A stretch of DNA of 63,065 bases, the filler included, from Octopus bimaculoides (lineage: Eukaryota): NCBI RefSeq assembly GCF_001194135.2. It is 6 parts of 6 records of this genome, joined end to end, with 100 filler letters (N's around TTAATTAATTAA, not from the genome) between each part and the next. Parts side by side here need not be neighbours in the genome. Positions count along the whole stretch, not along the records: positions 12,572 to 41,121 come from NC_068989.1; 5 more parts are not named here. One strand, 5' to 3'. Made by a program: the position numbers and the translations under genes. Below are positions 12,572 through 39,612 of the stretch, piece by piece; the stretch's first letter is position 1; each line of letters starts with the position of its first letter. The notes beneath the pieces are model-generated. The model made no database searches. It worked only from the letters and a program-made list of their open reading frames with translations, and had not been told where the DNA came from.

Positions 12572-12799
12572 CAATAGTGCTTTTACCTGGCACGAACCCA
12601 AACTGCATCTCATCTAAATTGATTCGCTCCCTAATTAGTTGGGCTATGACCCTCTCTGTAACTTTCATAACCTGATCTAACAGCTTGATGCCTCTGTAAT
12701 TATTTGTATCTAAAGTGTCACCTTTACCTTTGTAGCAGTTGACTATGATGCTGCTACACCAGTCATTGGGTATGACTCCTTCGTGTATCACCTGGTTCG

Positions 12800-12800
<1 letters not shown>
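12572..12800 (-). mobile_element. RTE-clade LINE fragment (RT N-terminal region)
   Basis: Translates as IPNDWCSSIIVNCYKGKGDTLDTNNYRGIKLL...QFGFVPGKST. Confidence 0.9.
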
Positions 12801-12850
<50 letters not shown>

Positions 12851-12982
12851 TACATACATACACACACACATGATGTGTAAGATGTTATGTAAAGTCACTT
12901 CCAAAATAAAATAAAATATATTGAGAATCTGTAAGTTATACTCTAATGATGACATATCTAACAATATTTGAAATAAACTTAC

Positions 12983-13063
12983 CTCACAAACTGATCAACA
13001 ATTCTATGTTTTATCATAACTTCTGTATTAGGTCTGGCCATTGCCAGTATATCTTTAGATACC
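12983..13063 (-). CDS. PTPDC1: PTPDC1-like phosphatase, internal exon: (W)VSKDILAMARPNTEVMIKHRIVDQFV
   Basis: Acceptor ttttatttcag, donor ag|gtaagt; 81 nt, phase 2/2; resembles the remembered PTPDC1 motif WVTDNILAMARPS..IIDQF; the split W codon fits the upstream exon. Confidence 0.88.
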
Positions 13064-13792: not shown

Positions 13793-15542
13793 CGGCTATT
13801 GAAAATTCCTGTGAAAAGGCTTCATTCAGTTTCTGTCTACCAAATCCACTCATAAGGCTTTGGTCAGCACAAAGCTATAGTGGAAGACACTTCACAATGT
13901 GCCACAGAGTGAGACTGAACCTAGAACCATGTGGTAGGGAATTAAGATTCTTACTACACACCCACGCCTGTGCTTACGGGCAGGTTTTCTACAATAGTCT
14001 TGGGCTGACACAAATCTTTTGACAGGATTTGGTAGATGGAAATTGAAATAAGCTATATGTGTGTGTGTGTGCGTTTGTGTCTCCTTGGTCTTGACATCAT
14101 GTAATAGTTGTAAATGAGTGCCACTGTCATTCATTTCCAGTATTCTGTAAAAATGTCTGGCCATGGGGAGATACTACCTTGCTTGGAAAACAGGTAAGGG
14201 TTGGTAACAGAAGGGCATCTGGTTGTAGAAAACCTTCCTCAATAAGCTCTGCCCAATCCATGCAAGCATGGAAAAGTAGATGATAAAACAAAAGGGAAAC
14301 TGAAACATAAAATACTTTAGCTATATTGGGTATTTTAAGGATGGCACTATTGATGCTATTTAGAATTTTCATAAACACGTAGTGGCAATCATCCCTCTCC
14401 AAGATCTTTCACGATTTAATTCCCAGTTAAACTGACAGAAATTAGACAAACTAAATGTCTTTGTTAAAATACATTACAATAGCTAAGAAAGGCAACACTA
14501 ATAATGATGATATTATTTCTTGGTAATTTCTTTCTCTTGCTGATTTCCGATATTGGAATGGGGCCATGCTGGAGCACCACCTTCAAAAAGGTTTTAGTTA
14601 ATTATATTGATCTCAATACTTAGTCTCGTATGTATGTCAGATACAAAATAATAATAATAATAATAATAATAAAATGCAGTCAACATTTCTATAAAAGGAA
14701 TTAATTCATGCAAACTTAAATATCCAGGTCACTAACACTTTTAGCCCAAATGTATTGGTTCTCACCCAACATGCACGAACATATATATATATATATATNN
14801 NNNNNNNNNNNNNNNNNNNNNNNNNNNNNNNNNNNNNNNNNNNNNNNNNNNNNNNNNNNNNNNNNNNNNNNNNNNNNNNNNNNNNNNNNNNNNNNNNNNN
14901 NNNNNNNNNNNNNNNNNNNNNNNNNNNNNNNNNNNNNNNNNNNNNNNNNNNNNNNNNNNNNNNNNNNNNNNNNNNNNNNNNNNNNNNNNNNNNNNNNNNN
15001 NNNNNNNNNNNNNNNNNNNNNNNNNNNNNNNNNNNNNNNNNNNNNNNNNNNNNNNNNNNNNNNNNNNNNNNNNNNNNNNNNNNNNNNNNNNNNNNNNNNN
15101 NNNNNNNNNNNNNNNNNNNNNNNNNNNNNNNNNNNNNNNNNNNNNNNNNNNNNNNNNNNNNNNNNNNNNNNNNNNNNNNNNNNNNNNNNNNNNNNNNNNN
15201 NNNNNNNNNNNNNNNNNNNNNNNNNNNNNNNNNNNNNNNNNNNNNNNNNNNNNNNNNNNNNNNNNNNNNNNNNNNNNNNNNNNNNNNNNNNNNNNNNNNN
15301 NNNNNNNNNNNNNNNNNNNNNNNNNNNNNNNNNNNNNNNNNNNNNNNNNNNNNNNNNNNNNNNNNNNNNNNNNNNNNNNNNNNNNNNNNNNNNNNNNNNN
15401 NNNNNNNNNNNNNNNNNNNNNNNNNNNNNNNNNNNNNNNNNNNNNNNNNNNNNNNNNNNNNNNNNNNNNNNNNNNNNNNNNNNNNNNNNNNNNNNNNNNN
15501 NNNNNNNNNNNNNNNNNNNNNNNNNNNNNNNNNNNNNNNNNN

Positions 15543-17228: not shown

Positions 17229-17391
17229 CAATGAGAAAAGAGTCCGGTAATAGCCATTTGGCCTTCCCAGCAGTCACTGCGATCATATTTACAATTGCGG
17301 CCACCACAAAACAAAGCACATTGGTTCTTCAACGAAATTAAGCCCTGAGCCTGTTCTGTCAGGACACTATATTGAGGGTTAGGAATGCTGG
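17229..17391 (-). CDS. PTPDC1: PTPDC1-like phosphatase, internal exon: SIPNPQYSVLTEQAQGLISLKNQCALFCGGRNCKYDRSDCWEGQMAITGLFSH(W)
   Basis: Acceptor ttttatcatttcag, donor tg|gtaagt; 163 nt, phase 1/2; CGGRxCKY..W...AIxGxxSxW matches the remembered PTPDC1 N-terminal motif. Confidence 0.9.
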
Positions 17392-17519
17392 CTGAAATGA
17401 TAAAATAATATTGATGATAATCATGAGGAGTCCATTAAAAACAGTTAAAATATGACATGTAAATTAATGTATTTATGCAGATCACATTAACCATTAACAA
17501 ATAAATTCTAATTTATATA

Positions 17520-18860
17520 ACATATCTATTCATTCTTAACACATTCTGGCAGATTCAAATGTAACCATCTGGTCACTTTTGTTTTTTATCAATGGAAAAC
17601 ATCACCTCCTTTTAGATGACATGTTCAAAACCATACGGTTTACTGGTGTGAGGGGACTTCGAAACACTAGTGTTTCAACCTTATAGTATGTCTCATCAGT
17701 CAAAGTTATTCTGTCAGACTGATGAATCAGACAAAAGCACGAGCTCTTGTTTATAGGGATCAGCAAGTTATTTGCTGATGCAAGCTGATTTCTGCTAAAC
17801 AGATAATAAATGCATGCAGAACATTGAGGATCAAAACAATGATATACCTATACATTATTAATTCTGGCAGGTTTGAACATGAATATCCTGATCTCTGTTG
17901 TATTTCATCTTCAGAGAATATCTCTCTTTAGACGATGTGTGTTCATAATACATGCAATTTGTTTACTTTTGTTTACTCATTGATCTGCAAGTCACTTTGA
18001 ATGAAGAGACACATCATAAGGTCAAAATAACCGTGTCACAAAGTAAAAAAGTCCCTTATGTCAATGAATTGTGTGTGTTCATGCATAACACACATTGTTT
18101 GAAGGAAGGAGGTATTCTCCAATGACAAAAAACAACAGCAATCAGCATATTTATGTTTGAATTGTATTAAAAAGGAACAGATACATTCTCATTTAGATTC
18201 TTGATGTTCTGCATTCACCTCATGAATTATGATCTGGCAGACATCAGCATGCATCAGCAAATAATTTGTTTGCAGCTTTCTATAAACAAGAGGTACTACT
18301 CCCATTTAGATTCACTGATTTAGGGATAGCTTTGGCAGAAAAGACACAATAAGATTGAAATGCCTCAAACTCAAAATTCCCTTACACCAACGAACCATGT
18401 CTACCTATATTGTCATAAGGGAGGAGATATTCTTTAAAGGCAAAATGTAACAGTGATCAGCAGATTCACAAATGAATCTGCCAGACTGTTTTGAGAGTGA
18501 TAAATAAGTTATCATTTAGATTCTTGCTGTTCTGCATACACCACAAATTATTATCTGTCTGGCAAACATTAGTATACATCAGCAAATAATTTATTTGATG
18601 ATTTCCATAAACAAGAGCCAGTACTCTTGTTAGTTTCATTGATCTAGGGGTAGCTTTGACTGAGAAGACACACAATATGGTTGAAACACTACATTGTCTC
18701 AAAGTCGTCATCGGAAGACCAGAGATGTTCACTAAAGACAGAATACAATAGTGATCAGCACATTCATTTTTGAATCTCTCAAAATGTGTTCAAAATGAAT
18801 AGATACATCATTGTTTAGACTCTCACTGTTTTACGTAGATCCCCTGAATTGTAATTTATA
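17520..18860. repeat. Diverged ~310-bp repeat: about 3 direct units plus inverted partial units
   Basis: Block gttctgca..catcagcaaataa..ataaacaagag recurs near 18205 and 18525, partially at 18750-18860, and as reverse complement at 17520-17960. Confidence 0.7.
17656..17706 (-). ncRNA. Minimal type-I hammerhead ribozyme, intact core
   Basis: ACUUUGA-CUGAUGA-GAC(auacuauaag)GUU-GAAA-CACUAGUG-UU-UCGAAGU; 7-bp stem I, perfect palindrome ACACUAGUGU as stem III. Confidence 0.85.
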
Positions 18861-20038
18861 AATGTATGGAAGGGACATAATTCAGCATTCACCAATTGAA
18901 TTTATTTAATGGTGCTGCCAACCACACAATAGGTGAAATAGATGAAACAACTGAATGATAGCATAATTTACAGTAAACCATTTGGTTGCTGCTTTTAAAG
19001 GGTTCATCTATTCATGGGTTATTGAGTGTTAGTCAACACCGTAGGCTCCAGTACTTGACTTGTACTTTATTTCATCAACCCTGGAAGGTTGAGCTGAAAC
19101 AAACATAGCAAAGCATTTTCCTGATGTTCTAATGATTCTGTTAGATAGAAATTCTTTGATTTAGCAGAGTTCACTTTATATTAGCTTAAAATAGAGTCAA
19201 ATACTTCATTTATTTTCAAAACATTGGATGTGATATTTACAATAGTATCAACAAGTCATATAACCATATCTTTATTCTTTCACTTTGGAATACAGAGGTA
19301 TGGAATTATAGAATTTTTCTCTTTTCCAAAACTTCCTAAAGGAAAGCTAGATTATAAGACAGCTCATCTGACAAACTAATGACATTCGAATCTTTGCCTT
19401 CTTTTGTCACCCCTTTGTTATGGGGAAACAGGTTAAGGGTTGGTGACAGGAAGGGTACCCAACCATAGAAAAATCTCTCAACAAATTCTGACTGATTCAT
19501 GCAAACATGGAAAAGTGGACATTAAAACTATGATGATGATGATGAAATGAAAATATTATCTTTATAATATATATCAAAATATAATTTATAAATTGATATT
19601 TAAAAAGTATATTTATATATATCATATATATTAAAAATGTTATTTTTATAATATATATCTTTATATTATTTTTATTAACATGTCTTTATAATATATTGGT
19701 TTCAAATTTTGGTACAAGGCCAGAAAGTTCAGGGGAGGGGGTAAGTCAATTACATCGACCCCAGTGTTCAACTGGTACTTATTTTATTGACCCCGAAAGG
19801 ATGAAAGCAAAGTCGACCTCGGTGGAATTTGAACTCAGAAAGTAAGGACAGATGAAATACCACTGAGCATTTTGCCTGGTGTGCTAATGATTCTACCAAT
19901 ATATTATTTATATTAAAATGTTATCTTTATAATAGATATTAAAATGTAAATGAAATGTTACCAAAATTTCACAATTAAAATTTAAATATTAGAATAAGAA
20001 ATATAAAAAAAAGCAAAAAACAAGAAAATGTTATATAC

Positions 20039-20121: not shown

Positions 20122-20899
20122 CTTAAAGAAGAAAAGATAGAAAGAAATGTAAAACACAGACTTATAAATTAAATTCCATGTTGTCTTTCTGTCATATTGT
20201 CTCTTAAAATCCTCTCATGGCTTAGAATGAACTTTTCTGTAACTGTACATTGATAACTCTAGATATGGTCGTGTTGGACTAATAACAGGCTTTTTTTAAA
20301 CTCAGTATGTTTGGTTGGTTTCAATAGTAACACAAAAACATCTGATAAAAAAAAACCAAAAAAAAAAACCAGCAATAATATTCCTGACCCTCTTTGCTGT
20401 TACTAGGAATATTACCACCTACAGACTGTGGTGGTTATTTCTTAGTGATGTAAACAACAACATAACAGAATTCACTTTAAAGAGCAACATGAATAATTAA
20501 TCAAAGTGAATAAGAGAAAGAGAGAGAGAGAAACAATAGGATTGTATACAACTGAATCTCATGCTTCACAACAACAGATCATGTTTGAACACATTCTTAC
20601 ATCATTATCAATTAACATCTGTCTTCTGGCATAGATTGGCTGGTTTGAGAGGATCTGATAAATCAAAGGACTGTGTTGAGCTCCAGTTTCTCTGCTTTGG
20701 CATGTTTTTCTTTTATGGTTCAATGCCCTTCTTAACACCAACCAGTTTACTGAAAGTATTGAGTGCCTTTTTCATGCCACTGGCACAAGTGAAGTTACCA
20801 AGTAACTTGCAAAACAAGACAACAACCTTTGAGCTGAGTGGGGTTGTAATAGAGAGTGAGATGGTTTTGTGCCAGGCGTTGAGAAGTTAAAGTTTGATA

Positions 20900-21545
20900 C
20901 GAGTGTCAGCTGAAAAGTTCATAGGCTGACCAAAATTCTCTCATAAAATGTGACCAAATAAGGTTTATTTTTCAACATAGTCTCCCTTGCAACCAACACA
21001 CTTCTTCCATCAGTGTTGCAGTGCTTGGATCCCATTGGTGAAGATGCTTCCATCATGTTGATCGAAAAAACCCATCAGAAGTAGATATGACATCATCATG
21101 ACTATGATACTGGTTATCATTTTGAGGAACAGATGATAGTAAGATGGAGGCCAAATCAGGAGAATCTGGAGGTTGATCAACTAGTTCAAAGCCATAGTCA
21201 TGCACAGAAGCCATTGAAACCAAAGAATTGCGTGCTGGTCCATTGTCCTGATGAAACAAGACCCCTTTTGTCAGTTTTCCTGGGCATTTGATCTTCATAG
21301 CCTTTCATAACTGCCTCAGCAAGTTGACATAGTAGTACTCTCTACTGATGGTGAAGCCTTTTTGAAGATAGTCAATAAACACAGTGCCATTTGCATCCCA
21401 AAAAACTGAGGCCATTGCCTTCCCTGCAGATGAAACAACCTTGGCCTTCTTTGGAGCTTTGGTGATGAGGGGTATTTCCACTGCATGGATTGCCTCTTTG
21501 TCTCTTGCTCAAAGTGATAAACCCAATACTCATGGTTACCCCAGC
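20900..21545 (-). mobile_element. Mariner family 1 fragment (one TIR plus 3' transposase)
   Basis: TA+cgagtgtcagctgaaaagttcataggctgac; FHQDNGPA, QPPDSPDLAS, EQETKRQSMQW; frameshifted. Confidence 0.9.
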
Positions 21546-22819
21546 TAAAAAGAGAGAAAAGAGATGGTAGTGATGGGGCATCAGGGCATACACCCAAAGT
21601 ATAAGAATGTGAAAATGAGAGAGGATACAGACAGAGGATTGAAAGTGGTGGGTGAGTAGATAAGTTTGTGAGAGTATGAAAGGAATGTGGTTAGAGATGC
21701 AGTTCCAAGATCTAGTTCTTACTGTCGGGAACACAATCAAGTAAACTATCCTAAAATAAAATTTGTAGTCATTACTCTGTGTAACAGAAGTATTTTTTTT
21801 TTTGCCTTTGGTCAGTAAAGTGTTATTTCCTAATTGTTTCTATCAAGAAATCAAAGGAAATGACCATTATTCCCTTCAAACTTTGTTTTTGTGACCTGGA
21901 CATCAATGTTTTAAAACTGACCCATTTTCCATTACATTTCAGACAGACTCAGGACTGAGTTGCTGAAGTAGAATTTTCTAGTACTTTTTAGAAGTTTCTA
22001 AAAGTTTCAAGAATGGCAGTATAAATACAAGGCTCGTAAGCTCAACAGTTCAGTTTACTTCTAGCTGTCCAAGTGGAGACAAGTTTTAGGAAAGCAAAGC
22101 TTGAAGGAAATATCAGCCATTTTTTATGCTTTCTAGGGATAAGCAAATAGGAAATAACAGTCACTACCCAAGGACAAAAATTGTGTTACACAATGTTGGA
22201 TCACAATGAATGTGCTTGCAACTCAATGGAGATCCTTTAACCATTAAAAACTAAACTAATATGACAGGCTGTTTAAAAGGGAGAATATGATAAATTCATG
22301 GATATGGTGAGTAGCCCTTTCATTAGTTTATTTTCTTTTACTATCTTACATCAATTCTTTTTTAAGTGAGTATGATATATTTTATTAGAATAGATTGTTT
22401 TCACATCTGGATGATTACCCGACTACAAAAATACTCAACAGTGAAGTCGGAATTCAACTTGTTGTTATTTGTGCAAAATATGGATATGACAATATCTATT
22501 TATTTACTGCTTTCACTGTATTGAAGTTTTAGTAATTATTCTTATACAATTTAATAATTATACTCACATCTAAGGTAGTGAGGTGGTATAATTGTTAGCA
22601 TGCTGGAAAAAATGCTTATTGGCATTTTGTCTGTCTTTACGTTCTGAGTTCAAACTCTATGGAGTTCAACTCTGCCTTTCATCTTTCCAGGGTCAATAAA
22701 ATAAGTATCATTTCATCAATTGATTTATTCCCTCAAACGAAATTGTTGGCCTTGTACCAAAATTTGAAACCAATACTTACACTCATCAAGAAAACACCTT
22801 TACACTCCACTCCCTACAT

Positions 22820-23200: not shown

Positions 23201-23842
23201 ATACTTTCTGTGACTGACATAATTTATTTACATAATGATCCAAAATTGAGACTGGTGGCCTGACAATTTTTTTTCTTTTTCATTACTTGTTGGATTTTGA
23301 AAGTGCCCATGACTTTTGAAATTCTTCCTCAACTTGTGAGACAAATTGTATTAATGTTTAACTTAAACTGTTACAAGTTGACCCCTGTAAGGAACAAAGA
23401 GGAGATTTCAGAAGGATGATGTTCTAGAGAAGGAAGGAAGGAATGGGAACAGTGATTAGTACAGGGTCTGGGGTGTTGGACACAACATGGGTGATGAGAG
23501 GTGACAAGACAAGTGGATCAGGGATGCCCGAGTGGAGGTAGTACAAAAACTGTCAACATCAAAGAACAGAGGTCATTACAGTATTGACAGAAATGGCAAT
23601 AAGGGGAAAAAAGACAGAGATGGTGGAGATGAGATGCCAGAGCAAACTAATGTTAAATAGTGAGTTCATATATTTATTTTTTCATGCAAAGTAAAGCAAA
23701 AGCAAAACTATGTCTTGTTGACTTGTGTGGTAAAATGACAGTGCTGGACTGATGTAAATGAGATAATCCAGCATCTTAATCTCAAAGTCAGGATCATTCC
23801 TGTAATGCCATCAAGTAATTACATCAACAACATAATCAAACC

Positions 23843-25427
23843 CAGTACAGCAATGAATTCCGGGTAGAGGTAGGGGTCCACCAAGGTTCCGTCCTCAGCC
23901 CCCTATTATTTACCATAGTCCTCCAGGCAATCACAGAGGAGTTCAAGACAGGTTGCCCCTGGGAGCTCCTCTATGCTGATGACCTTGCCCTAATTGCGGA
24001 GTCACTATCAGAACTAGAGGAGAAGTTTCAGGTGTGGAAGCAAGGTCTAGAATTGAAGGGCCTTAGAGTCAACCTAGCTAAAACCAAAATCCTAATAAGT
24101 AGGAAGGTAGATAAAACACAAACCCCTTCAGGTAGATGGCCCTGCTCAGTATGTAGAAAAGGAGTAGGTAGTAACTCTATAAGATGTACCCGGTGCAAGC
24201 TATGGACACATAAGNNNNNNNNNNNNNNNNNNNNNNNNNNNNNNNNNNNNNNNNNNNNNNNNNNNNNNNNNNNNNNNNNNNNNNNNNNNNNNNNNNNNNN
24301 NNNNNNNNNNNNNNNNNNNNNNNNNNNNNNNNNNNNNNNNNNNNNNNNNNNNNNNNNNNNNNNNNNNNNNNNNNNNNNNNNNNNNNNNNNNNNNNNNNNN
24401 NNNNNNNNNNNNNNNNNNNNNNNNNNNNNNNNNNNNNNNNNNNNNNNNNNNNNNNNNNNNNNNNNNNNNNNNNNNNNNNNNNNNNNNNNNNNNNNNNNNN
24501 NNNNNNNNNNNNNNNNNNNNNNNNNNNNNNNNNNNNNNNNNNNNNNNNNNNNNNNNNNNNNNNNNNNNNNNNNNNNNNNNNNNNNNNNNNNNNNNNNNNN
24601 NNNNNNNNNNNNNNNNNNNNNNNNNNNNNNNNNNNNNNNNNNNNNNNNNNNNNNNNNNNNNNNNNNNNNNNNNNNNNNNNNNNNNNNNNNNNNNNNNNNN
24701 NNNNNNNNNNNNNNNNNNNNNNNNNNNNNNNNNNNNNNNNNNNNNNNNNNNNNNNNNNNNNNNNNNNNNNNNNNNNNNNNNNNNNNNNNNNNNNNNNNNN
24801 NNNNNNNNNNNNNNNNNNNNNNNNNNNNNNNNNNNNNNNNNNNNNNNNNNNNNNNNNNNNNNNNNNNNNNNNNNNNNNNNNNNNNNNNNNNNNNNNNNNN
24901 NNNNNNNNNNNNNNNNNNNNNNNNNNNNNNNNNNNNNNNNNNNNNNNNNNNNNNNNNNNNNNNNNNNNNNNNNNNNNNNNNNNNNNNNNNNNNNNNNNNN
25001 NNNNNNNNNNNNNNNNNNNNNNNNNNNNNNNNNNNNNNNNNNNNNNNNNNNNNNNNNNNNNNNNNNNNNNNNNNNNNNNNNNNNNNNNNNNNNNNNNNNN
25101 NNNNNNNNNNNNNNNNNNNNNNNNNNNNNNNNNNNNNNNNNNNNNNNNNNNNNNNNNNNNNNNNNNNNNNNNNNNNNNNNNNNNNNNNNNNNNNNNNNNN
25201 CATAAAAGACACCATTTCGAGCGTGGCCGTTTTCGTGCGGGTGACACGTAAAAGCACCCACTACACTCTCTGAGTGGTTGGCGTTAGGAAGGGCATCCAG
25301 CTGTAGAAACTCTGCCAAATCAGACTGGAGCCTGGTGTTGCCATCCGGTTTCACCAGTCCTCAGTCAAATCGTCCAACCCATGCTAGCATGGAAAGCGGA
25401 CGTTAAACGATGATGATGATGATGATG
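23843..25427 (+). mobile_element. 5'-truncated RTE-clade LINE spanning a gap
   Basis: GVHQGSVLSPLLF...LLYADDLALIA...WPCSVCRKGVGSNSIRCTRCKLWTHK before the gap (24215-25200); 3' UTR with (GAT)n tail after it in the same orientation. Confidence 0.85.
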
Positions 25428-27123: not shown

Positions 27124-27372
27124 CATTATTTACAATATTTACATTCAACGGATATTTGTCCTCATCTTGTTTGTTGTTAACACAATGTTTTGGCTGATAT
27201 ACCCTCCAGCCTTCTTCAGGGTTCTTGGGGAAATTTCGAACCTGGGTTCTCATTCCTAAGGTATTTTTCGATGTTATTATTATTATTATTATTATTATTG
27301 TTCAGGTCAATGCTTGGAATCGAACTCAAAATCTTGGGGTTAGTAGCCTGTGCTCTTAACCACTACACCATA
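27124..27372 (-). mobile_element. Hammerhead-bearing tRNA SINE (family H); hammerhead decayed
   Basis: Head ggtgtagtggttaagagc...gagttcgattcc, (AAT)n, body; core CUGAAGA but GAAA>AAAA and stem I damaged (27179-27224). Confidence 0.85.
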
Positions 27373-27418: not shown

Positions 27419-27670
27419 GGCGTAGTGGTTAAGAGTGCCCAAAATTCTGAGTTCGATTCCAAGCAGTGACCTGAATACTAATAATAATAATAATAACAAC
27501 ATCAAAAAATACCTTAGGAATGAGAACTCAGGTTTGAAATTTCCCCAAGACACCTGATGAAGGCTGGAGGGTATATCAGCTGAAATGTTGTGTTAACAAC
27601 AAGCAAGATGAGGACAAATATCTGTCGAATGTAAATAATGTACATAATTCCTCATCTCTTAAATATAGAA
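27419..27670 (+). mobile_element. Hammerhead-bearing tRNA SINE (family H)
   Basis: ggcgtagtggttaagag..gagttcgattccaagc head, (AAT)n, hammerhead at 27549-27594, AT-rich 3' tail. Confidence 0.85.
27549..27594 (+). ncRNA. Minimal type-I hammerhead ribozyme
   Basis: GACAC-CUGAUGA-A-GGCUG..CAGCU-GAAA-UG-UU-GUGUU; two CpG-decay changes give G-U wobbles, core intact. Confidence 0.8.
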
Positions 27671-29714
27671 AAGCATTATGCTTGATAGAATAATCTGAAT
27701 GTTAAAAATGTGTTGTTGTCACAATATATCCTTACTGATAATGAAATCAGACGTTTGAAGGGATGATAAGGGTTCTAGTTGCATGATGTTCATGTTTGGA
27801 GTGGTGTGTATGATTATGTTGTCTTGCAACATGTGAAGTGATTTTTTTTTACCAATTAAGCAATCAAAATTAGCATAACCCCTTAGTAGGCTATTTTCAA
27901 AATTCATGTTGATGGAGTCTCAGTGCAGGTTAGTTGTGAGGTGTTTAGGTTACATGAGGATGGTGCTTGAGTGTGGCAGGTTAGGAACAGCTGAAGGGTG
28001 GCATTATCTGTGTAAGTGTTATTGGAAGCGACTACAAGTAGAAGGTTGATGTAGAAGAAGAAGAAAGTGGGGGGTGGGATGGGGTGGACATAAAAACTAA
28101 GCCCTGGAATGCACCAAAAGAGATGTGGGTCAGAGAAAGCTCCATTAGCACAATAAATGATGATACAATTTGACTCACTGATCTAAGAAATGAAAAACAG
28201 TCTATGGACTAGAAGTTTGACCATGAGAATTTGCATTCCAGACACAGTCAAAATCTTTACTGATATTGAGGGTAACAATAATATTTTCGCTATATTTCTC
28301 AAGGACGAGAACCCACAGAGGTGTTGGGCTCATGAACCACTATTTAGGCTCTCAGTTACTGGTTCAAATCATACTAAGGTCAACTTTGTCTTTCGTCTTT
28401 CATTCCTACAAGGTCAATAACAGAGTAGCTTATACAATCAACTGCAGCCTTCACTTCCGACAATTAGTCTTGTAGCTAATTAACCACTATTTAATTGATT
28501 TGATGAAATATAAGACAATTGCTAATTAACGATGTTCAGTGATGAGTTATTACATCTATTGATCAAATGGAGAAATGGAACCATGGCTTTTATGCCTTAC
28601 CTAATAGTATGAGTGATCTTGAAGAAATGAAATACCTACTAACTTCCAAGCTTACTTTTACTGAAAATTACTTCTACTTTAACATGTTTGTCTCAAGATG
28701 AATGTACATAAAACATTGTGCAGGGTTAGGTTGGTAGTAACCAAAGAGCATCTATAACACAACCAGTAATATGCAATTAAAAGATGGTCATTAACATTTG
28801 TCTGGTGGCAATTATTGATATTTATCTCTACCTGGAACAAACCATCTCCCTTATAACTGCACTCCAACTCTGTCAAAGAGTCTTGTCTTGTAAATTATTT
28901 GTTGACCTCAATAGAGTTGGGGGCTATGAAAAAAGCAACCAGTACACTCTGTAAAGCTGTAGAAACTTTGCCAAAGTAGACACTGAAGCTCAATGCAATG
29001 CTCTGGCTTGTTGGATCCTGTCAAACTGTCCAACCTATGCTAGCATGGAATATGGACATTAAATTATGATGATGACAATTTCATTAAGCTGCTCAATCAA
29101 ATAGCACCAAGAGTGCAATAGGTATTTCAAATATAGTCTATGGTCTTGGATTATGTCATTAGGAGGGAGTTACAAGATTTAATATATAGACTGTTGAAAT
29201 ATATTATTTTAATCAACAATTTTTTGACATAAAAGTACCCTACACATTAAAAGAAATGTTACTTTTGTGGTATTTAGACAGATGTTGTATTCAAGGTTTC
29301 TAATTACTTGATGCTCTATGGTAAATAATGCATAACAATAATCCTAATTGATCCCTACTATTGGGGCAAAACCATGACTTTTGGCAGTGGGAGAGAGAGA
29401 GAGAAAAAGAGATGTAGTCAATTTAATAATTAGTGCTTGTTTTATCAAACTCAGAAGGATAAATGACAGTCATCTTTGGTAGAATGTATGACCAAAACAT
29501 CTGGAGAGATAAGTTACAAAGTGCAGACCAGAAGTTTCGAGACATTTTTAGGAGAAGCAATTATAACTTTCCTAGATTACTATGATTTTAGTATATCATT
29601 ACTATACATCTAATAAGCTGACCTGCCAACCTCTGTTAGTCAAGATTGAAGAAGATAGCTGTAACAATACTTTGAACACACACCCAACTGAACACTGCTT
29701 CTCACAGTTGACTT

Positions 29715-31012
29715 CGAGGGTCGGCTGAAAGGTTTATAGGTTGACCGAGATACTCTCATGAAATGTGACTAAATGAGGTTTATTTTTCAACATAATCCCC
29801 CTTGCATTCTGCACATTTCTTCCATTGGTGTTGCAGTGGTTGGATCCCATTGATGAAGAAGTTTTCATTGTGTTGGTCAAAAAAGTCATCAATGGAAGAC
29901 ATGAGGTCATCATCACTGGGATACTGCTTTCCAGCCAAGTGTTTTATCATGTTGGAGAACAGGTGATAATCAAATGGAGTCAAAGCAGAAGAATAGGGAA
30001 GGTAATCAACCAGTTCAAAGACAAAGTCATGTATAGCAGCCACTGATACGAAGGACTTGTGTGCTGGAGCACTGCCCTGATGAAACAAGACCCTTTCATC
30101 AGTTTTCCTGGGCATTTGGTTTTCAAAGCTTTTAGTAACTATATCAGCAAAGTACTCTCCATTGATGGTGTGGCCCTTTTGAAGATAGTCAATAAACACA
30201 ATGCTGCTTGTATTCCCCCATAAAAAAACAAAAAAAAAAACAGGCCAACACCTTCCCTGCAGATAAAACGATCTTCACCTTCTTTGGAGCAGGTGAGGAA
30301 GTGTGTTTCCACTGCCTGAATTGTCTTCTTCTCTATGGTTCAAAGTGATGAACCCAACACAAATCCCAGCTTAAGAAACAATTAAGGAAACCAGATGGAT
30401 CTGCCTCAAACAATGTTAGATTTTCCTGTGATGTGACAAGCCTGGTGTGCTTTTGACCAGGTATCAGAAAACATAGCACACACTGAGCAGAAACCTTCAT
30501 CATATTCCTTGTGCAGAATCTTCTCAACTTTCTCACAGGATATGCTAATAGCATTGGCCACTTGACTGATAGTCAAATGCCTGTCATCCATCACCATGTG
30601 ATGAACATGATAAATGTTTTCCTTGGTGGTGGCAGTTGGAGGACGTCCAGACCTTTGGTCATCTTTGGGACTCTCCCTTCCCCTCCTAAATTCAGTTGTC
30701 CACTTTTGCACTGTTGATAAAGCTGGAGTGTCATCTCCTAATGTAGTAACTATGTCAGCATGAATGTCCTTGAAGGCTAAACCCCTTTTCTGCAGATACT
30801 TGAAAACACCATGATGCCAAATTTTTGTCCATTTTCAAGAGAAGTTGCTACTAGTTACCTTTGAAGTCTTCTTTGGACAGTCAGATGTCAGTTTATTTGG
30901 AAAGAAACAGTGCAGCTATTAATAAGAAGGGTTGAAATTAATGAGTACAAGATTTCACAGCTCTAGCATCACTCCTTCATAGTCAGCCTATGAACTTTTC
31001 AGCCAACCCTTG
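29715..31012 (-). mobile_element. Full-length degenerate mariner (family 1, DD34D spacing)
   Basis: 31-bp TIRs 29715-29745 and 30982-31012 (TA on the right); HTH KWTTEFRRGRES..DDQRSGRP; 34-residue spacing from HQG(D) to TPFDY; multiple stops and frameshifts. Confidence 0.95.
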
Positions 31013-31936: not shown

Positions 31937-33224
31937 GCACACAAAGTTGTATGATAAACAATCTTTCATATGAGAATTTTGCTACGTTGATAACAGGTAC
32001 AATATTTTTACCGAATATTTGGGAGAGATCTAAATATACATATATATATATACTAGCACTTAAGCCCGGTTTCACCCAGTTGGTTTGGATGATGTGGCTG
32101 TAAAACCTGCTCTGTGTAAGCATTTGACTTGTTTGGGCATACTTATGAAAAATACAATTTTAGAATGACATTTTTCTATCAAAACGCTAAAAATAACTGA
32201 CCAAAAAAAAAAAAAAAAGCCAAGAGTCAACCAAATCAAAAAATAAACCCAAATACTAAGTGAACAAAGATGAACCATCCCACTTCTATTGTGCACGCAC
32301 ATGCACACACAAACACACATTCACATACTCCCGCTTTTACATACACACAGATATATTCACACGGAGTTGAAATGCTGTTTGATTTATTTTTCAGCATACA
32401 ATTTTCATGATCCCACTACCAAGTATGACATCACCCTTCCTTTCTCATTCATAAACACAAGAGTATTATTATAGTAGATTATCTCGGTAACCATGGGAAC
32501 TATGAAAAAAATACAAGGCCCAGCAGCATCACTGGATCATTCTACACATCTGTGTAATTTTTCACACAATTCCACCCAGCCGTTTGATCGTGAATCCCAA
32601 GACAAGAAATAATCGCCCTGTCAAATTTATATGTATAGATATATATATAAAGCATGATTTATTCGTGATCAGAGTTGGTCGAAAACCAAGGTACTACCGT
32701 GTGTGTATGTGTGTGTGGAGGCGCAATGGCCCAGTGGTTAGGGCAGCAGACTTGTGGTCGGAGGATCATGGTTTCGATTCCAACACCGGGCATTGTATGT
32801 GTTTAGCGAAAGCACCTAAACTCTATGAGGCCCCAGCAGGGGGTGGTGGCGACCCCTGTTGTACTCTTTCGCCCCAACTTTCACTCTTTCTTCCTGTTTC
32901 TTGAGTAAAGCTGCGATGGACTGGCGTCCCATCCAGCTGGGGGGGGGGGCACATATGCCATAGAAACCGGGAAACCGGGCCCATGAGTCTGGCTAGGCTT
33001 TAAAAGAGTAAATAAATAAATAAATATATATATATTCAATATAAAGTATACGAGAAATTACCTATACGATATTGAATATGTTGTCTATTGACTTTTTTAC
33101 ATGCTAGGCCACTGGTAGTATAACTTTGTATAGTTTATATATTTATTTATTCATGAACATTGGTTGCTATTATTAACTAACATTAAGACAGTTCAAGCTA
33201 AATTTTCTAACTTTATTATTATTA

Positions 33225-33398
33225 AGGCGATGAGCTGGCAGAATTGTTACAGGGTGGACAAAATGCTTAGTGGTATTTCTTCAGGCTCTTTATGTTCTGA
33301 GTTTAAATGCCACTGAGGTCAACTTTGGCCTTCCATCCTTTCAGGGTAGATTAAAATGAAGTGCCAATCAAATACAGGGGTTGTATTATTAGAAAGAA

Positions 33399-33429
<31 letters not shown>

Positions 33430-34810
33430 TATTATTATTATTAAGGTGATGAGCTGGCAGAGTCAATATAGGACGGACTAAATGCTTAGTGGCATTTCTT
33501 CCACTTCCAGCTCCATACATTTTGAGTTCAAATCCAGCTGATGTCAACTTTGCTTCTGATTCTCCAGGTCAAGGAATGGGGTTTATGTATTCAACTAACC
33601 CACCAAAACTGCTGACTTTATGTCAAAGTTTGAAACAATTCTTAATATTACTGGTGGACTTGCAGACTCGACAGAGCATCAGGCAAAATGCCTTGAGGTG
33701 TTTTTTCAGTTTCTATGGAATCTATGTTCAAATCCTGCAAAAGCCAACTTTACCTTTCATCTCTCTGAGGGGTGGGGTTTGATACAATAAATTACCAGCC
33801 TTGTGCCAAAATTATAAAGAATTATTATTATTATTATTATTATTATCATTATTATATAAGGCAGCAAGCTAGCAGAATTGTTAGTATGCTAGACGAAATG
33901 CTTAGCACTATTCTGCCTGTTGTTCCATTCTGAGTTCAAATTCCACCAAGGTCAACTTTGCCTTTCATCCTTTTGAAGGTGATAAAATAATTTCCAGTTG
34001 AGCACTGGGATTGATGCAATTGACTAAGACACTCCCCCGAAATTTCAGGCCTTGTGCCTATAGTAGAAAGGATTATTACTGTTATTATTATTATTACTAC
34101 TACTAAGGTAGCAAGCTGGCAGAATCGTTAGCATGCTGAGCAAAATGCTTAGTGGCATTTTGTTTGTAAGTGACTTACTTACTCCTCTGAAATTACTGGC
34201 CTTGTGCCAAAATGTGATATTAAAAAGCAGCGAGATGATAGAATCACTAGCATGCCAGGCAATATGCTTAGTGGCATTTCATCTGTCCTTATGTTCTGAG
34301 TTCAAATTCTTCCGAGGTTGACTTTGCCTTTCATCCTTTCGGGGGTCGATAAATTAAGTATCAGTTGAGTACGGGAGTCAATGCAATCGACTAGTACCCT
34401 CCCGCAAAACTTTACATCTTGTGCCTTTAGTAGAAAGGATTATTATTATTATTATTGTATACGATTGACAAATTCTATCACTAAGGTAAACATAGCTACA
34501 TCTCGTGTGTCTTCATCTGGTTCAAAATAAAATAAATGTCAGTCTAATTCATGCTGTTAAGCATTTTGTCTCTCTTTACATTCTAGTTTAAATTCCTCCA
34601 AGGTTGACTTTGCCTTTCATCCTTTCAAGGTTGATAAAATAAGTACCATTTGAGCACTGGGGTTGATGTAATCCCCTTCCCCTAAAATTGCTGCCCTGTG
34701 CCAAATATGAAACCATTATTATTATTAAGGCAACAAATTTATAGAATCATTAGCATGTCAGACAAAATACTTAGTGGTATGCCTTCCAACTCTTTACATT
34801 CTGAGTTCAC
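33225..34810 (+). mobile_element. Head-to-tail train of ~8 SINE family B copies separated by (ATT)n
   Basis: Heads near 33225, 33443, 33650, 33858, 34105, 34225, 34545, 34727. Confidence 0.85.
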
Positions 34811-37800
34811 ATCATTATTCATGCAGTTTTTGAGCATTACTAATTTGTGAAGTAACGTTGAACAGCTGTTGTTGTATGTAGGATGGATCCAGCTATCAGC
34901 TGGGTACATTGTGAGGATTACTCCCACCATCAACCTTTAACAAGGTGGTGAAAGAGGTGTGGTGACAAGGCTGAAAGGATTGAGGACAGGCACTCTCCTC
35001 TTTGGTCAAGCCTTTATCAACTTTTTTCAAGTTCCACTTGAAAAGGAAAGTGAGAGAGGAGAGGAAAGTGATTTCCTCCAGTGAATTTGTCCAGAGATGA
35101 GAAACTGGCAAAAATGATTAGGCTGAATGGACCTACTCTATGCATGTGCCTGTGGAGAGGAAAACAACAGCTGGGTCAGGGGCTTGTGTTCTAGATGACC
35201 AGGGTGTTGCTATATCTGTAGGGTTTCTTGACTGGCCTTAGTTAGAGGCTGTCCTGTACCTAGAGGACTGCATCATCTATATGTTCACATTCTTTGTATG
35301 CTATGTATATTTTTTATTGTGAAGGTGTGTGGCTTAATGGTTAGGGTATTTGGCTTACGATCGTAAGGTCATGAGTTCAATTCCTGGCGATGCATTATTT
35401 CCTTGAGCAAGACAATTTATTTCATGTTGCTCCAGTCCACTCAGCTGGCAAAAATGAGTAGTACCTGTATTTCAAAGGGCCAGCCTTGTCACAGTGTCAT
35501 GCTGAATCTCCCTGAGAACTACATTAAGGGTACACCTGTCTGTGGAGGGCTAAGCCACTTGCACGTTAATTTCGCGAGCAGACAGTTCTGTTGATTGGAT
35601 CAATTGGAACCCTTGTCATAACAAATGGAATGCCAGATATTTTTTATCTTATTTCCACTTTCTCTCTCTTTCTTCTCATTTGTTTTACGTAAATCCCAAC
35701 ACTAATTGTAAACTGTCCTTGTAAAGCTCCCCTTATTTGATGCCCCTGTGGCAAACTAAAAAAAAATATTATCATTATTATTATCAAGAAGGTGTTAGAT
35801 TAGCATAATAACAGAATGTCTTGTGCTATTTACTTATGTTTCTTTATGCTTAAAGTTCAAGCCTTGCTGGGGCTACATAATATTTTATTGTTTGAGGTCA
35901 ATTATTTAATTACTACTCAAATCAACAATAAGCCTCATCCTGAATGTGGGTCTTCAGCCTAACTTAGAAATTATCATTATTACTAAGGCAGTGAGCTGGC
36001 AGAATTATTAGCATGCTGAGCAAAATGCTTAGCGGCATATCGTCCGTCTTAATGTTTTGAGTTAAAATTCTGCTGAGATCAACTTTGCCTTTCGCCCTTC
36101 TATATTTCTATAATACACAAAATATTTTAACAAATTTTTAAATACAATTCCTTCTCATATTTACGTATAAAAAATATAATAGGATTTTTAAAACTTTGAA
36201 TGGCTATGAGGATCTACCTGAATAAAATACAAATCAAAGGGGTCCATAGGCAAAATATGGTTGAGAACCACTGGACTGAACCCCACTCCCTTTAAAATTG
36301 CTGGTTTTTGCCTAAAATAGAAACGATTTGACAGAATCGTTAGCGCACCGGACGAGATGTTTGGTGACATTTCTTCCACTTCATGTTTTGAATTCAAATG
36401 ACACCGTCGAGGTTGACTTTGCCTTTTATCCTTTCGGCATTGATAAAATAAATACCAGTTAAGCACTGAGATCGATATTGCAGAAGATTATAAAATAAAA
36501 CCGAGCAAGTGCGAGATGTCGACCACTAAAACGAAGTTGAATAAGCTCAGATATTTAGGTTGTGTTTAGCTACAGGTCAGACACAGTCAAGGGTATATAA
36601 GGAAAGCTTAACAATACTGTATTTATGAATGATTTAGGCGTAATTTCATTTCATGCAAGATTTGGACGTCGAAATGTTTTGGTAGTAGATAGACTAAAAT
36701 TTAAACGATACTAGAAAAAATTCTCCAATGCATTTCGAAGTATGATAATTCTAATGACTATAAATGTTTTTATGGGTAATACACGTTTTCATCTACGAAG
36801 GCAATTTTATGATATTTTGTCGAAGTAAAAACGTTCATAGAAAAACTGTTCAATTAAATCAATATTATGTTTATGTGCCAATTTCCTGAATAAATCCCAC
36901 CACAACAATTGCGATGTACAAAATAATAAACAGTAGAGAAAGATGCTAATATATTAAGAAATTGGAATGGTGAATTATAAAACAGGGTTTAGGGGTCTAG
37001 ATTCTGTGTTTAAGAGAACTGCCAGCCGTGTCTTTAAAAAATTAAATTACGTTGTTATCGATACGATAGCGATTCTCTTTCAAATACACATTCCGCACGC
37101 ATATATACGTACACATGCACCTACATAGTCACATGTACGTTTATCTAACTAGAGACAGACACACGTTTATCAATATTATTCTATTACATACCTATTAAAC
37201 AACCTAAATTATTACATAAACTATCACGTTAAATATACGGCGTTACGCTATATATACATATATGTATGTGTGCATGTGTGTGTGTAAAGAGAGAGAGAAC
37301 TGTGTCGTGTTTAATTATTTATTACTAAAAATAGGAAGGCGTTATTATAGTTGGGTTTATCAAACATATTATCAAATATGACGATATGCACATGGATAAT
37401 TACACATTGGTCTTCGGCTTACACACATATACCTTAATTGTCATAGACAAAGATATTCAATTCGTAAATTTATTCGTCACAAAAACCGTTGGCCTAATAC
37501 ATGCATAGCAAGGCGACATGGAGAAGCTAATTATAAACAAATATACGCTTGTTGTTCATTGAAAGAAACTTTTGATAATTACCTTAAACCGAACGAATAA
37601 AGTTGAGATAAAATTCCTTTAGACAAACTCCTGCCATCCTCTGCTTTGTTCAGTCATTCGTGAAACTTCCTTGCCAACCAACTGTAAACATTGAACCGGT
37701 GGAGGCTGATATCACTTGCCGCTTGAAATTAAGTCCGACATCAGTTGTTTGTTGTTGAGAAATTTTATTTTCCTCGACTAAACCAAAGGAAATCGCTAAA

Positions 37801-39545: not shown

Positions 39546-39612
39546 NNNNNNNNNNNNNNNNNNNNNNNNNNNNNNNNNNNNNNNNNNNNNNNNNNNNNNN
39601 NNNNNNNNNNNN

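What the first reader, a model, noticed from the sequence alone, without database searches (positions are those of the whole stretch)
17656..17706. Textbook minimal hammerhead in sense orientation 265 nt upstream of a splice acceptor
Seen: full core, 7-bp stem I, 3-bp stem II and a perfect 10-nt palindromic stem III, with no recognisable carrier element around it. Inference: it could pair in trans or at long range with another molecule and cut the PTPDC1 pre-mRNA. Minimal hammerheads without tertiary contacts may be slow in vivo.
Basis: partly seen in the sequence, partly recalled or inferred. Interest (0 to 1): 0.75.

Follow-up and report, generated by a model that had tools for sequence, protein, structure and literature searches.

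The report
Decayed hammerhead-bearing tandem repeat in intron
The hammerhead ribozyme motif is really there, but it is one unit of an old, decaying cluster of about 330-base repeats of a known mobile-element type (animal "retrozymes"), and this copy probably cleaves poorly if at all, so it is an ordinary relic and not a dedicated regulator of the gene.

Summary
The motif exists on the minus strand, 17706 to 17656. It has every invariant hammerhead core base, a 7-bp stem I, a 3-bp stem II and a 3-bp stem III. It lies in sense to a PTPDC1-like gene, 265 nt upstream of the acceptor of exon 17391-17229. A descriptor scan finds it once in the piece; dinucleotide shuffles predict about 0.0007 per piece.

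The motif sits in a 1.45-kb array (17517-18965) of a ~330-nt, 34% GC repeat: about 1.4 units on the minus strand, head-to-head with about 3.3 units on the plus strand. Three plus-strand units carry degenerate copies of the same hammerhead. The majority consensus of the four is a cleaner hammerhead, with a GUC site and a perfect stem I.

This matches metazoan non-LTR retrozymes: type I hammerheads in 150-450 bp, low-GC tandem repeats. Units are only 58-73% identical, so the array is old.

The intact copy is weakened. It has U17, a G10.1-U11.1 wobble, and a 16-nt palindrome that pairs GAA with UUC. An upstream 9-nt segment pairs with GACUGAUGA. The hammerhead fold is 16.6 kcal/mol worse than the MFE. 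No Rfam model matches.

Verdict: a relic retrozyme-like repeat, a new member of a known kind, of modest interest.

The parts
17656..17706 (-). Complete type I hammerhead motif (copy M). Stem I 5' strand 17706-17700; CUGAUGA 17699-17693; stem II/loop 2 17692-17677; GAA 17676-17674; stem III hairpin 17673-17664; U17 at 17663; predicted cut 17663|17662; stem I 3' strand 17662-17656.
   Evidence: Sequence. It is the only descriptor hit in the piece, against 0.0007 expected per piece.
17661..17676 (.). Perfect 16-nt palindrome GAAACACTAGTGTTTC. It extends stem III into the core (G12-C1.2, A13-U1.1, A14-U17) and competes with stem I.
   Evidence: Self reverse-complement BLAST hit. Pair probabilities are 0.83 for the extension and about 0 for stem I.
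17717..17725 (-). Upstream 'anti-core' segment UCAUCAGUC. It pairs 9/9 with GACUGAUGA (17701-17693) and so sequesters the first core strand.
   Evidence: Inverted repeat I20. The helix appears in both the MFE and the centroid structure. Pair probability is 0.95-1.0.
17668..17945 (-). Repeat unit m1 (minus strand; unit positions ~30-318). It carries the intact hammerhead at its 3' end.
   Evidence: nhmmer E=1.4e-73; alignments. The fold z-score is -3.35.
17517..17661 (-). Repeat unit m2 (minus strand; first ~143 positions of the next unit). The array ends 126 nt before the exon acceptor.
   Evidence: nhmmer E=1e-35; alignment.
17945..18044 (+). Partial unit u0 (plus strand; 3' ~100 nt of a unit) with degenerate hammerhead A at 17994-18044. 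Its core reads AUGAAGA ... AAAA, its stem II is GAC/GUC, and its site is GUC.
   Evidence: nhmmer E=4.5e-4 for a segment not used to build the model; alignment A2.
18047..18366 (+). Repeat unit u1 (plus strand). Degenerate hammerhead B at 18329-18377 spans its 3' end and has core CAGAAAA.
   Evidence: nhmmer E=2.5e-87; alignments.
18372..18692 (+). Repeat unit u2 (plus strand). Degenerate hammerhead C at 18653-18705 has core CUGAGAA (G8->A), a perfect stem I CUUUGA/UCAAAG and a GUC site.
   Evidence: nhmmer E=1.2e-91; inverted match I5 to copy M at 85%; alignment A2.
18699..18965 (+). Repeat unit u3 (plus strand), the most diverged and truncated before the hammerhead. It marks the right end of the array.
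   Evidence: nhmmer E=1.8e-59.
17229..17391 (-). Exon of the PTPDC1-like gene, encoding ...CALFCGGRNCKYDRSDCWEGQMAITGLFSHW. The acceptor AG is at 17393-17392 and the donor GT at 17228-17227.
   Evidence: Sequence. The joined peptide hits PTPDC1 N-termini at E about 1e-16, one of them named as PTPDC1.
12983..13063 (-). Next exon of the same gene (VSKDILAMARPNTEVMIKHRIVDQFV), in phase with the previous one.
   Evidence: Sequence; the same protein hits.

Best explanation
The motif is the best-preserved hammerhead in a short, old array (17517-18965) of a ~330-nt, AT-rich repeat. That repeat belongs to, or closely resembles, the metazoan non-LTR retrozymes, which are hammerhead-bearing tandem repeats linked to Penelope-like elements. 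When such a family is active, multimeric transcripts are cut by the type I hammerhead in each unit. The monomers are then circularised by a host tRNA ligase and copied back into DNA, probably by a Penelope-like reverse transcriptase. Those mechanistic steps are taken from the literature and are not shown here.

In this locus the array was inserted, or rearranged, head-to-head inside an intron of a PTPDC1-like gene and has since decayed neutrally. Three units lost core bases. The sense-strand unit kept all of them by chance, but it acquired C17->U and possibly C11.1->U by CpG decay. It also acquired changes that create a 16-nt palindrome and a perfect anti-core helix. Its catalytic fold is therefore strongly disfavoured, and it is most likely inactive or very slow, with no dedicated role in the host gene.
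For: Shown:
- About 5 repeat units of ~330 nt lie in two orientations, and no other copy occurs in the piece.
- Each of three further units has a degenerate hammerhead at the homologous position, 1-2 core substitutions away from an intact core.
- The majority consensus of the four is ACUUUGA CUGAAGA GAC..GUU GAA ACACUAGUGU C UCAAAGU. This is a full hammerhead with a GUC site and a perfect 7-bp stem I.
- Hammerhead pairs hold in 90% of cells, against 14-46% when the partner columns are slid.
- GC is 34% and CpG observed/expected is 0.21.
- Units are 58-73% identical in all pairings, and the hammerhead region is not clearly better conserved than the rest: 63-82% against 63-73%.
- The hammerhead fold is -0.8 kcal/mol against an MFE of -6.6 for the 51-mer. 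It is 16.6 kcal/mol worse than the MFE in 161-nt context, where stem I probability is about 0, stem II about 0.0004 and the anti-core helix >=0.95.
- No Rfam hammerhead model matches, even at E<=10.

Literature: type I hammerheads in 150-450 bp, low-GC tandem repeats define animal non-LTR retrozymes, including a mollusc (PMC7229834). A short helix III with a palindromic loop is typical of metazoan type I hammerheads (PMC4209133). Tandem plus inverted 5'-truncated insertions are typical of Penelope-like elements (PMC8557442). Retrozymes are related to the pseudo-LTRs of those elements (bioRxiv 10.64898/2026.07.22.740005).
Against: - Only one locus could be examined. No other family member was retrievable, so genome-wide copy number, dispersal and expression are unknown.
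- No unit here is flanked by two intact hammerheads.
- With copy M left out, the consensus of the other three has A at G8, because B and C share it. The intact ancestral core therefore rests on M and A together.
- Covariation is not significant with four sequences.
- Nearest-neighbour folding ignores the tertiary stabilisation of the hammerhead core, so 'inactive' is a prediction.
- The only intact copy is the one in sense to the gene. That is not what selection against intron cleavage would favour.
Confidence: 0.75

Rival explanations
1. A functional, exapted intronic ribozyme. The sense-strand hammerhead cuts the PTPDC1 pre-mRNA co-transcriptionally 271 nt upstream of the acceptor and tunes splicing or mRNA output. 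The anti-core helix and the palindrome might act as a switch.
For: The core is intact, the motif is in sense and it lies near a 3' splice site. It is the only one of four copies with an intact core. Unit m1 is unusually well folded, with z=-3.35. Conserved intronic hammerheads exist in amniotes (cited in PMC7761336).
Against: The motif has a weak stem II with a G-U wobble at 10.1-11.1, a GUU site and no recognisable loop-loop contacts. The catalytic fold is 16.6 kcal/mol above the MFE. The hammerhead region is not clearly more conserved than the rest of the decaying unit. An intact core in one of four copies is expected by chance at this divergence: about 12-15% per copy by my estimate. No Rfam model hits. 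No orthologue data were available.
Confidence: 0.07
2. Pure coincidence. An AT-rich tandem repeat with no ribozyme ancestry happens to spell a hammerhead in one unit.
For: At the strict descriptor, about 0.0007 hits per 27 kb implies tens of chance motifs in a Gb-size genome. The scan that produced the finding looked at many windows. Rfam models do not recognise the motif. The leave-M-out consensus has a broken G8.
Against: The other three copies each lie within 1-2 substitutions of an intact core at the homologous position, with the stems in register. The four-copy consensus is a better hammerhead than any single copy. Unit size, tandem arrangement and GC match the known hammerhead-bearing repeat class (PMC7229834).
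Confidence: 0.08
3. A remnant of the pseudo-LTR region of an autonomous Penelope-like element, partly tandem and partly inverted, and not a non-autonomous retrozyme array.
For: The head-to-head junction at ~17945, with a 5'-truncated inverted copy, is the arrangement described for Penelope-like insertions (PMC8557442). Hammerheads of those elements lie in the pseudo-LTRs (PMC4209133).
Against: No reverse-transcriptase or GIY-YIG open reading frame lies between or beside the units, and the array consists of units only. At least three consecutive ~330-nt units fit a retrozyme multimer better. The helix sizes (I = 7 bp, II = 3 bp) differ from the min-HHR of those elements (I = 4-5 bp, II = 6-8 bp; PMC4209133).
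Confidence: 0.1

Closest known systems
Metazoan non-LTR retrozymes (Cervera & de la Pena 2020, PMC7229834): coral, mussel, axolotl
   Same: A type I hammerhead inside a short tandem repeat: ~330 nt here, against 170-400 nt. GC is low (34%), there is no coding capacity, and helix III is short with a palindromic tetraloop. As in the mussel, the archetypal loop 1-loop 2 contacts are not recognisable.
   Different: This is a small, old array of about 5 units at 58-73% identity, with only one intact core, so no monomer is bounded by two working ribozymes. It includes an inverted segment. Helix II is only 3 bp with a 10-nt loop. Expression and circular RNA could not be tested. Cephalopods are not mentioned in the papers I could search.
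Classical hammerhead satellites: newt satellite 2 (~330 bp), Schistosoma Sm-alpha, cave-cricket pDo500 (established knowledge; now counted as retrozymes in PMC7229834)
   Same: The unit length is about 330 bp, the organisation is tandem, and the hammerhead is type I with a weak, palindromic helix III. That helix III suggests a dimeric (double-hammerhead) mode in multimeric transcripts.
   Different: Those families have thousands of near-identical, transcribed copies. Here only a decayed local array is seen. The palindrome of copy M extends into the core, so even a dimer would pair GAA with UUC.
Minimal hammerheads in the pseudo-LTRs of Penelope-like elements (PMC4209133; PMC8557442)
   Same: A palindromic helix III, low predicted activity as a monomer, and a tandem-plus-inverted insertion architecture.
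   Different: There is no RT/GIY-YIG ORF at the locus. Helix I is long and helix II short, the opposite of the min-HHR pattern.
Conserved intronic hammerheads of amniotes (HH9/HH10) and the CPEB3 HDV-like ribozyme
   Same: A self-cleaving motif in sense inside an intron of a protein-coding gene.
   Different: Those are single-copy, deeply conserved, stably folded motifs that Rfam models detect. This one sits in a decaying repeat, is not detected by Rfam, and is predicted not to adopt the active fold.

Membership tests
Hammerhead ribozyme (type I) | Invariant core: C3 U4 G5 A6 N7 G8 A9, G12 A13 A14, A15.1-U16.1, H17 not G | tested here: met
   CUGAUGA ... GAA A...U U at 17699-17663 on the minus strand.
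Hammerhead ribozyme (type I) | Three helices around the core in the correct order, with helices II and III closed and helix I open | tested here: met
   The helices have 7, 3 and 3 bp. It is the only descriptor hit in the piece, against 0.0007 expected.
Hammerhead ribozyme (type I) | G10.1-C11.1 pair closing helix II next to the core, and a GUC/GUA-type cleavage triplet as in nearly all natural examples (established knowledge) | tested here: not met
   Copy M has G10.1-U11.1 and a GUU triplet. The other three copies have C17, and copy A has C11.1.
Hammerhead ribozyme (type I) | The catalytic secondary structure is accessible (at or near the MFE) | tested here: not met
   -0.8 against -6.6 kcal/mol for the 51-mer. 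The fold is +16.6 kcal/mol in 161-nt context, with stem I probability about 0 and stem II about 0.0004. The nearest-neighbour model ignores tertiary energy.
Hammerhead ribozyme (type I) | Match to the curated covariance models (Rfam Hammerhead_1, _II, _3, HH9, HH10) | tested here: not met
   No hit at gathering score over the piece, and none at E<=10 in 17300-18100 or 17900-19100.
Hammerhead ribozyme (type I) | Loop 1-loop 2 tertiary contacts that give fast cleavage in vivo | tested here: inconclusive
   No closing helix or internal loop is evident beyond the 7-bp stem I, and loop 2 is a 10-nt AU-rich loop. The mussel retrozyme hammerheads also lack the archetypal contacts (PMC7229834).
Hammerhead ribozyme (type I) | Site-specific self-cleavage giving 2',3'-cyclic phosphate and 5'-OH ends | not testable with these tools
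   Needs in vitro transcription or end-specific RNA sequencing.
Metazoan non-LTR retrozyme | Tandem repeats of 150-450 bp (dimers to multimers) | tested here: met
   Units of ~320-332 nt: u0 (partial), u1, u2 and u3 on the plus strand, m1 and m2 on the minus strand.
Metazoan non-LTR retrozyme | A type I hammerhead in each unit, so that a monomer is bounded by two cleavage sites | tested here: not met
   One intact core and three degenerate ones are present now. The four-copy consensus is intact, so the feature is inferred for the ancestor only.
Metazoan non-LTR retrozyme | Low GC (<45-50%) and no LTR, PBS, PPT or coding capacity | tested here: met
   GC is 34%. ORFs across the units have no Pfam hit and no real homologue. 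PBS and PPT were not searched for explicitly.
Metazoan non-LTR retrozyme | Many dispersed genomic copies, and expression as linear and circular RNAs | not testable with these tools
   Only this piece is available. Two pattern scans of metagenome contigs found nothing.
Penelope-like element (pseudo-LTR hammerhead) | Unit flanks an ORF with a telomerase-like RT and a GIY-YIG endonuclease | tested here: not met
   No such ORF lies in or next to 17517-18965. The nearest RT fragment (23819-24212, RVT_1) is 5 kb away and was not typed.
Penelope-like element (pseudo-LTR hammerhead) | Tandem plus inverted 5'-truncated insertion architecture | tested here: met
   There is a head-to-head junction at ~17945. 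The minus-strand copy starts at unit position ~30, as in PMC8557442 Fig. 2.
Conserved intronic hammerheads (HH9/HH10 type) | Conservation of the motif at the orthologous intron across species, above the flanks | not testable with these tools
   No cephalopod orthologue was retrievable. The best protein hits were about 50% identical.

The most novel reading that the evidence does not exclude
The sense-strand hammerhead is kept by selection as a gated, co-transcriptional self-cleavage element in the PTPDC1 pre-mRNA. The 9-bp anti-core helix and the 16-nt palindrome would act as an off-state that some factor or the rate of transcription can relieve. This would be an invertebrate counterpart of the amniote intronic hammerheads, exapted from a retrozyme.
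Probability: 0.04. Interest if true: 0.65.

Novelty: new member of a known kind. Interest (0 to 1): 0.3.

Why it matters
If the reading is right, it adds a cephalopod example to the hammerhead-bearing tandem repeats (retrozymes) known from cnidarians, bivalves, insects, flatworms and amphibians. It also gives a ~330-nt query with which the whole family could be found in cephalopod genomes and transcriptomes, along with any abundant circular RNAs it produces.

It is also a caution for scans. A formally complete hammerhead core in an intron is not evidence of gene regulation when it sits in a decaying repeat and cannot readily fold. Only if orthologous introns conserve the motif would it bear on the open question of how self-cleaving ribozymes become domesticated in host genes.

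Tried and rejected
- **Rfam.** There was no hammerhead hit at gathering score over the whole piece, nor at E<=10 around the motif or the plus-strand array. Only chance snoRNA- and sRNA-like rows appeared.
- **Metagenome contigs.** Two exact-pattern scans found nothing: one with the hammerhead consensus CTGANGAGACA..ATAWGRTYGAAAC, one with the conserved unit block CATCAGCAAATAAYTT..ATAAACAAGAG.
- **ORF translation.** I translated the 81-aa stop-free frame across unit m1 and searched 1.84 billion representatives, hoping to catch ORFs called on other copies. The single hit (P0027, E=7.5e-8, 5 stretches) is a BTB/BACK protein with duplicated exons on an unrelated contig, so I rejected it as spurious.
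- **Orthologous introns.** The protein search for cephalopod PTPDC1 orthologues gave only ~50% identical N-terminal fragments, and the PDB search gave nothing.
- **A fifth hammerhead.** I first thought a copy 'D' lay at ~18920-18990. The profile alignment places that stretch in another part of the unit, so I withdrew it.
- **Target-site duplications.** I found no convincing ones at the array ends.
- **Double-hammerhead dimer.** The cofold gives a 20-bp duplex that also buries GAA/UUC, and there is no second intact hammerhead on the minus strand.
- **Selection on the hammerhead region.** Identity there is 63-82%, against 63-73% elsewhere. Only the M-C pair stands out, so selection is not supported.
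Full report
**1. What is at the coordinates**

Read on the minus strand, 17706 to 17656 is ACUUUGA-CUGAUGA-GAC-AUACUAUAAG-GUU-GAA-ACA-CUAG-UGU-U-UCGAAGU. In standard hammerhead numbering every invariant position is present:
- C3 U4 G5 A6 U7 G8 A9
- G12 A13 A14
- the A15.1-U16.1 pair
- H17 = U

Stem I has 7 bp, one of them a U-G wobble. Stem II is GAC/GUU, 3 bp with a G10.1-U11.1 wobble next to the core and a 10-nt loop. Stem III is ACA/UGU, closed by the palindromic tetraloop CUAG.

Stems II and III are closed and stem I is open. This is therefore a complete cis type I hammerhead, and it needs no partner in trans. The predicted cut is between 17663 and 17662.

A descriptor written for this purpose (stem I >=6, stem II >=3, stem III >=3 bp, loops up to ~40 nt) finds this site and nothing else in the piece. 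It found 1 hit in 1500 dinucleotide-preserving shuffles, or 0.0007 per piece. That is far below one per piece. It would still allow tens of chance motifs in a Gb-size genome, so the motif alone does not settle its origin.

**2. Gene context**

On the minus strand there is a well-formed exon at 17391-17229, with acceptor uuucag| and donor |guaagu. A second exon at 13063-12983 is in phase with it.

The joined peptide (...CALFCGGRNCKYDRSDCWEGQMAITGLFSHW|VSKDILAMARPNTEVMIKHRIVDQF) matches N-terminal fragments of proteins at E about 1e-16. One member of the best cluster is named 'protein tyrosine phosphatase domain-containing protein 1' by its source.

The species could not be verified.

**3.

Repeat searches around the motif show that it is not solitary. 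Alignment and a profile search resolve a 1.45-kb array at 17517-18965, built from a ~320-332-nt unit.

| Strand | Unit | Coordinates | Note |
|---|---|---|---|
| minus | m1 | 17945-17668 | ends in the intact hammerhead |
| minus | m2 | 17661-17517 | first ~143 nt of the next unit |
| plus | u0 | 17945-18044 | partial, starts at the same junction |
| plus | u1 | 18047-18366 | |
| plus | u2 | 18372-18692 | |
| plus | u3 | 18699-18965 | |

The two blocks are head-to-head and meet at about 17945. No other copy occurs in the 28.5-kb piece. The array is 34% GC, with CpG observed/expected of 0.21. All pairs of units are 58-73% identical. The copies are therefore about equally diverged and the array is old: the Jukes-Cantor distance is about 0.38 between copies, or about 0.19 per lineage by my arithmetic.

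**4. The other units carry the same hammerhead, broken**

At the homologous position, three plus-strand units have degenerate versions:
- **Copy C (18653-18705):** GCUUUGA-CUGAGAA-GAC..GUU-GAA-ACAC..UGU-C-UCAAAGU. It has one core change (G8 to A), a perfect stem I and a GUC site.
- **Copy A (17994-18044):** AUGAAGA and AAAA, so C3 and G12 are lost. It has a GAC/GUC stem II and a GUC site.
- **Copy B (18329-18377):** CAGAAAA, with a disrupted stem III.

The tool's majority consensus of the four is ACUUUGA CUGAAGA GAC ACACnAUAAG GUU GAA ACACUAGUGU C UCAAAGU. This is a complete hammerhead with a GUC triplet and a perfect 7-bp stem I, so it is cleaner than any single copy.

Across the four copies, 90% of cells in the hammerhead pairs are standard pairs. 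When the 3' partners are slid by 1-3 columns the figure is 14-46%. With four sequences the covariation measures do not exceed the shuffles, and I make no claim from them.

Two inferences follow.
- **H17.** It was C in the ancestor, since three of four copies have C. Copy M carries C17 to U.
- **The 11.1/12 dinucleotide.** It reads UG in M, B and C, and CA in A. That is the pattern expected from decay of an ancestral CpG on either strand, which would make the ancestral pair the canonical G10.1-C11.1. This is plausible given the CpG depletion, but it is not proven.

One caveat applies. With M left out, the consensus of A, B and C has A at position 8, because B and C share that change. The intact ancestral G8 therefore rests on M and A.

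**5. Is copy M likely to work?**

The palindrome is 16 nt, not 10: GAAACACUAGUGUUUC at 17661-17676. It extends stem III by pairing A14-U17, A13-U1.1 and G12-C1.2. This removes three core purines and competes with stem I.

Results for the isolated 51-mer:
- The hammerhead secondary structure scores -0.8 kcal/mol, against an MFE of -6.6.
- The z-score against shuffles is +0.16.
- The stem II pair probability is 0.002.

In its native context a second trap appears. UCAUCAGUC (17725-17717) pairs 9/9 with GACUGAUGA (17701-17693). Results for 161 nt of context:
- That helix has probability 0.95-1.0.
- The palindrome extension has probability 0.83.
- Stem I has probability about 0, and stem II about 0.0004.
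- The best structure forced to contain the hammerhead is 16.6 kcal/mol above the MFE.

A homodimer folds into a 20-bp duplex that also buries GAA/UUC. The minus strand has no second intact hammerhead with which to form a double hammerhead in cis.

None of the Rfam hammerhead models reports the site, even at E<=10 in an 801-nt search where rows of 10-14 bits were listed.

These are predictions. Nearest-neighbour energies omit the tertiary structure of the core, and GUU sites and G-U closing pairs reduce activity without abolishing it (established knowledge of minimal hammerheads). Together they point to a very slow or inactive ribozyme.

**6. Selection or chance?**

The hammerhead region is not clearly better conserved between copies than the rest of the unit: 63-82% against 63-73%, and only the M-C pair stands out.

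At about 0.19 substitutions per site per lineage, the chance that 11 invariant positions all survive in a given copy is about 12-15%. One intact core among four copies is therefore unremarkable (my arithmetic).

Unit m1 does fold better than shuffles (z = -3.35, 0 of 200), while u2 does not (z = -0.94). The family consensus UCAUUGAUC is also largely complementary to the core strand: 8 of 9, counting two G-U pairs. The anti-core pairing may therefore be an ancestral feature of a highly self-paired repeat RNA, as described for retrozyme circles. This is inference.

**7. Comparison with what is known**

The literature held here describes exactly this kind of carrier. [quoted passage not shown] These are the non-LTR retrozymes. 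They are transcribed, self-cleaved and circularised by a tRNA ligase, and they are known from a coral, a mussel (350-390-bp units, hammerheads lacking the archetypal loop contacts, kobs ~0.1 per min) and axolotl (330- and 350-bp units) (PMC7229834).

Metazoan type I hammerheads typically have helix I of ~6 bp, helix II of ~4 bp, and a short helix III capped by a small palindromic loop, and they are thought to act as dimers in tandem transcripts (PMC4209133).

Penelope-like elements insert as partial tandems, often with an adjacent inverted 5'-truncated copy (PMC8557442). A 2026 preprint relates vertebrate retrozymes to the pseudo-LTRs of those elements, and reports that retrozymes are under-represented in introns.

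The locus here shares several of these features:
- the unit size
- the tandem organisation
- the low GC
- the lack of coding capacity
- the helix I and III architecture
- the tandem-plus-inverted layout

It differs in having a 3-bp helix II with a large loop. It is also small and decayed, with no unit bounded by two working ribozymes. I found no mention of cephalopods in these papers. I therefore file it as a probable new member of a known kind, with membership in the retrozyme class inferred for the ancestor. For the present sequence that membership is not demonstrated.

**8. What could not be done**

No other family member and no cephalopod orthologue could be retrieved:
- Two pattern scans of metagenome contigs were empty.
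- A search with the translated unit gave only a spurious BTB protein.
- The best PTPDC1 relatives were ~50% identical fragments.

Copy number, expression, circular RNA, conservation of the orthologous intron and actual cleavage therefore remain open. They are the decisive tests.

**9. Verdict**

| Explanation | Probability |
|---|---|
| Neutral relic of a hammerhead-bearing retrozyme-like repeat in an intron | about 0.75 |
| Remnant of a Penelope-like pseudo-LTR | 0.10 |
| Chance motif | 0.08 |
| Exapted regulatory ribozyme | 0.07 |

Interest is modest, at 0.3.

Noticed in passing
window 17717-17725 with 17693-17701 (minus strand): A perfect 9-bp 'anti-core' helix: UCAUCAGUC pairs with GACUGAUGA. 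The family consensus UCAUUGAUC is also 8/9 complementary, counting two G-U pairs. This may be an ancestral self-pairing of the repeat RNA that keeps the ribozyme off, as in viroid-like circles.
   Followed up: partly
window 27125-27299 and 27474-27648: Two tRNA-like SINE copies in inverted orientation (175 nt, 90% complementary, 174 nt apart), each next to an (ATT)n run. If transcribed they could form a long hairpin.
   Followed up: no
window 33200-36500; also 22554-22734 and 19693-19898 (inverted): A dense cluster of at least 9 copies of one SINE family (core GGCAGAATCGTTAGCATGC...AAATGCTTAGTGGCATTT...GTTCAAATTC), 60-90% identical to each other.
   Followed up: no
window 29706-30834 (-) and 20891-21304: Mariner/Tc1-like transposase remnants (Pfam HTH_48 3e-5, Transposase_1 1e-3), with a second copy about 80% identical 8.8 kb away. 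Both have broken reading frames.
   Followed up: no
window 23819-24212 (+) and 12573-12884 (-): Reverse-transcriptase fragments (RVT_1, E=1e-14 and 8e-3). The first is cut by an assembly gap at 24215-25200. I did not determine whether they are LINE-type or Penelope-type.
   Followed up: no
window 40851-41121: A 42-nt tandem repeat of at least 6 units that runs off the end of the piece. It is stop-free on the minus strand, reading (GPDRGKVAEFLLSV)n.
   Followed up: no
window 14799-15542, 24215-25200, 39546-39612: Runs of N (assembly gaps), the first flanked by (TA)n microsatellites. They produce artificial 'inverted repeats' and long 'ORFs' in mechanical scans.
   Followed up: yes
L001 10001-22196 (NCBI GCA_029852925.1, CM056765.1): The only library hit to the translated repeat unit is a 563-aa BTB/BACK gene model that repeats the same ~60-aa segment five times. 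This looks like a tandem exon duplication or an annotation artefact and is unrelated to the finding.
   Followed up: partly
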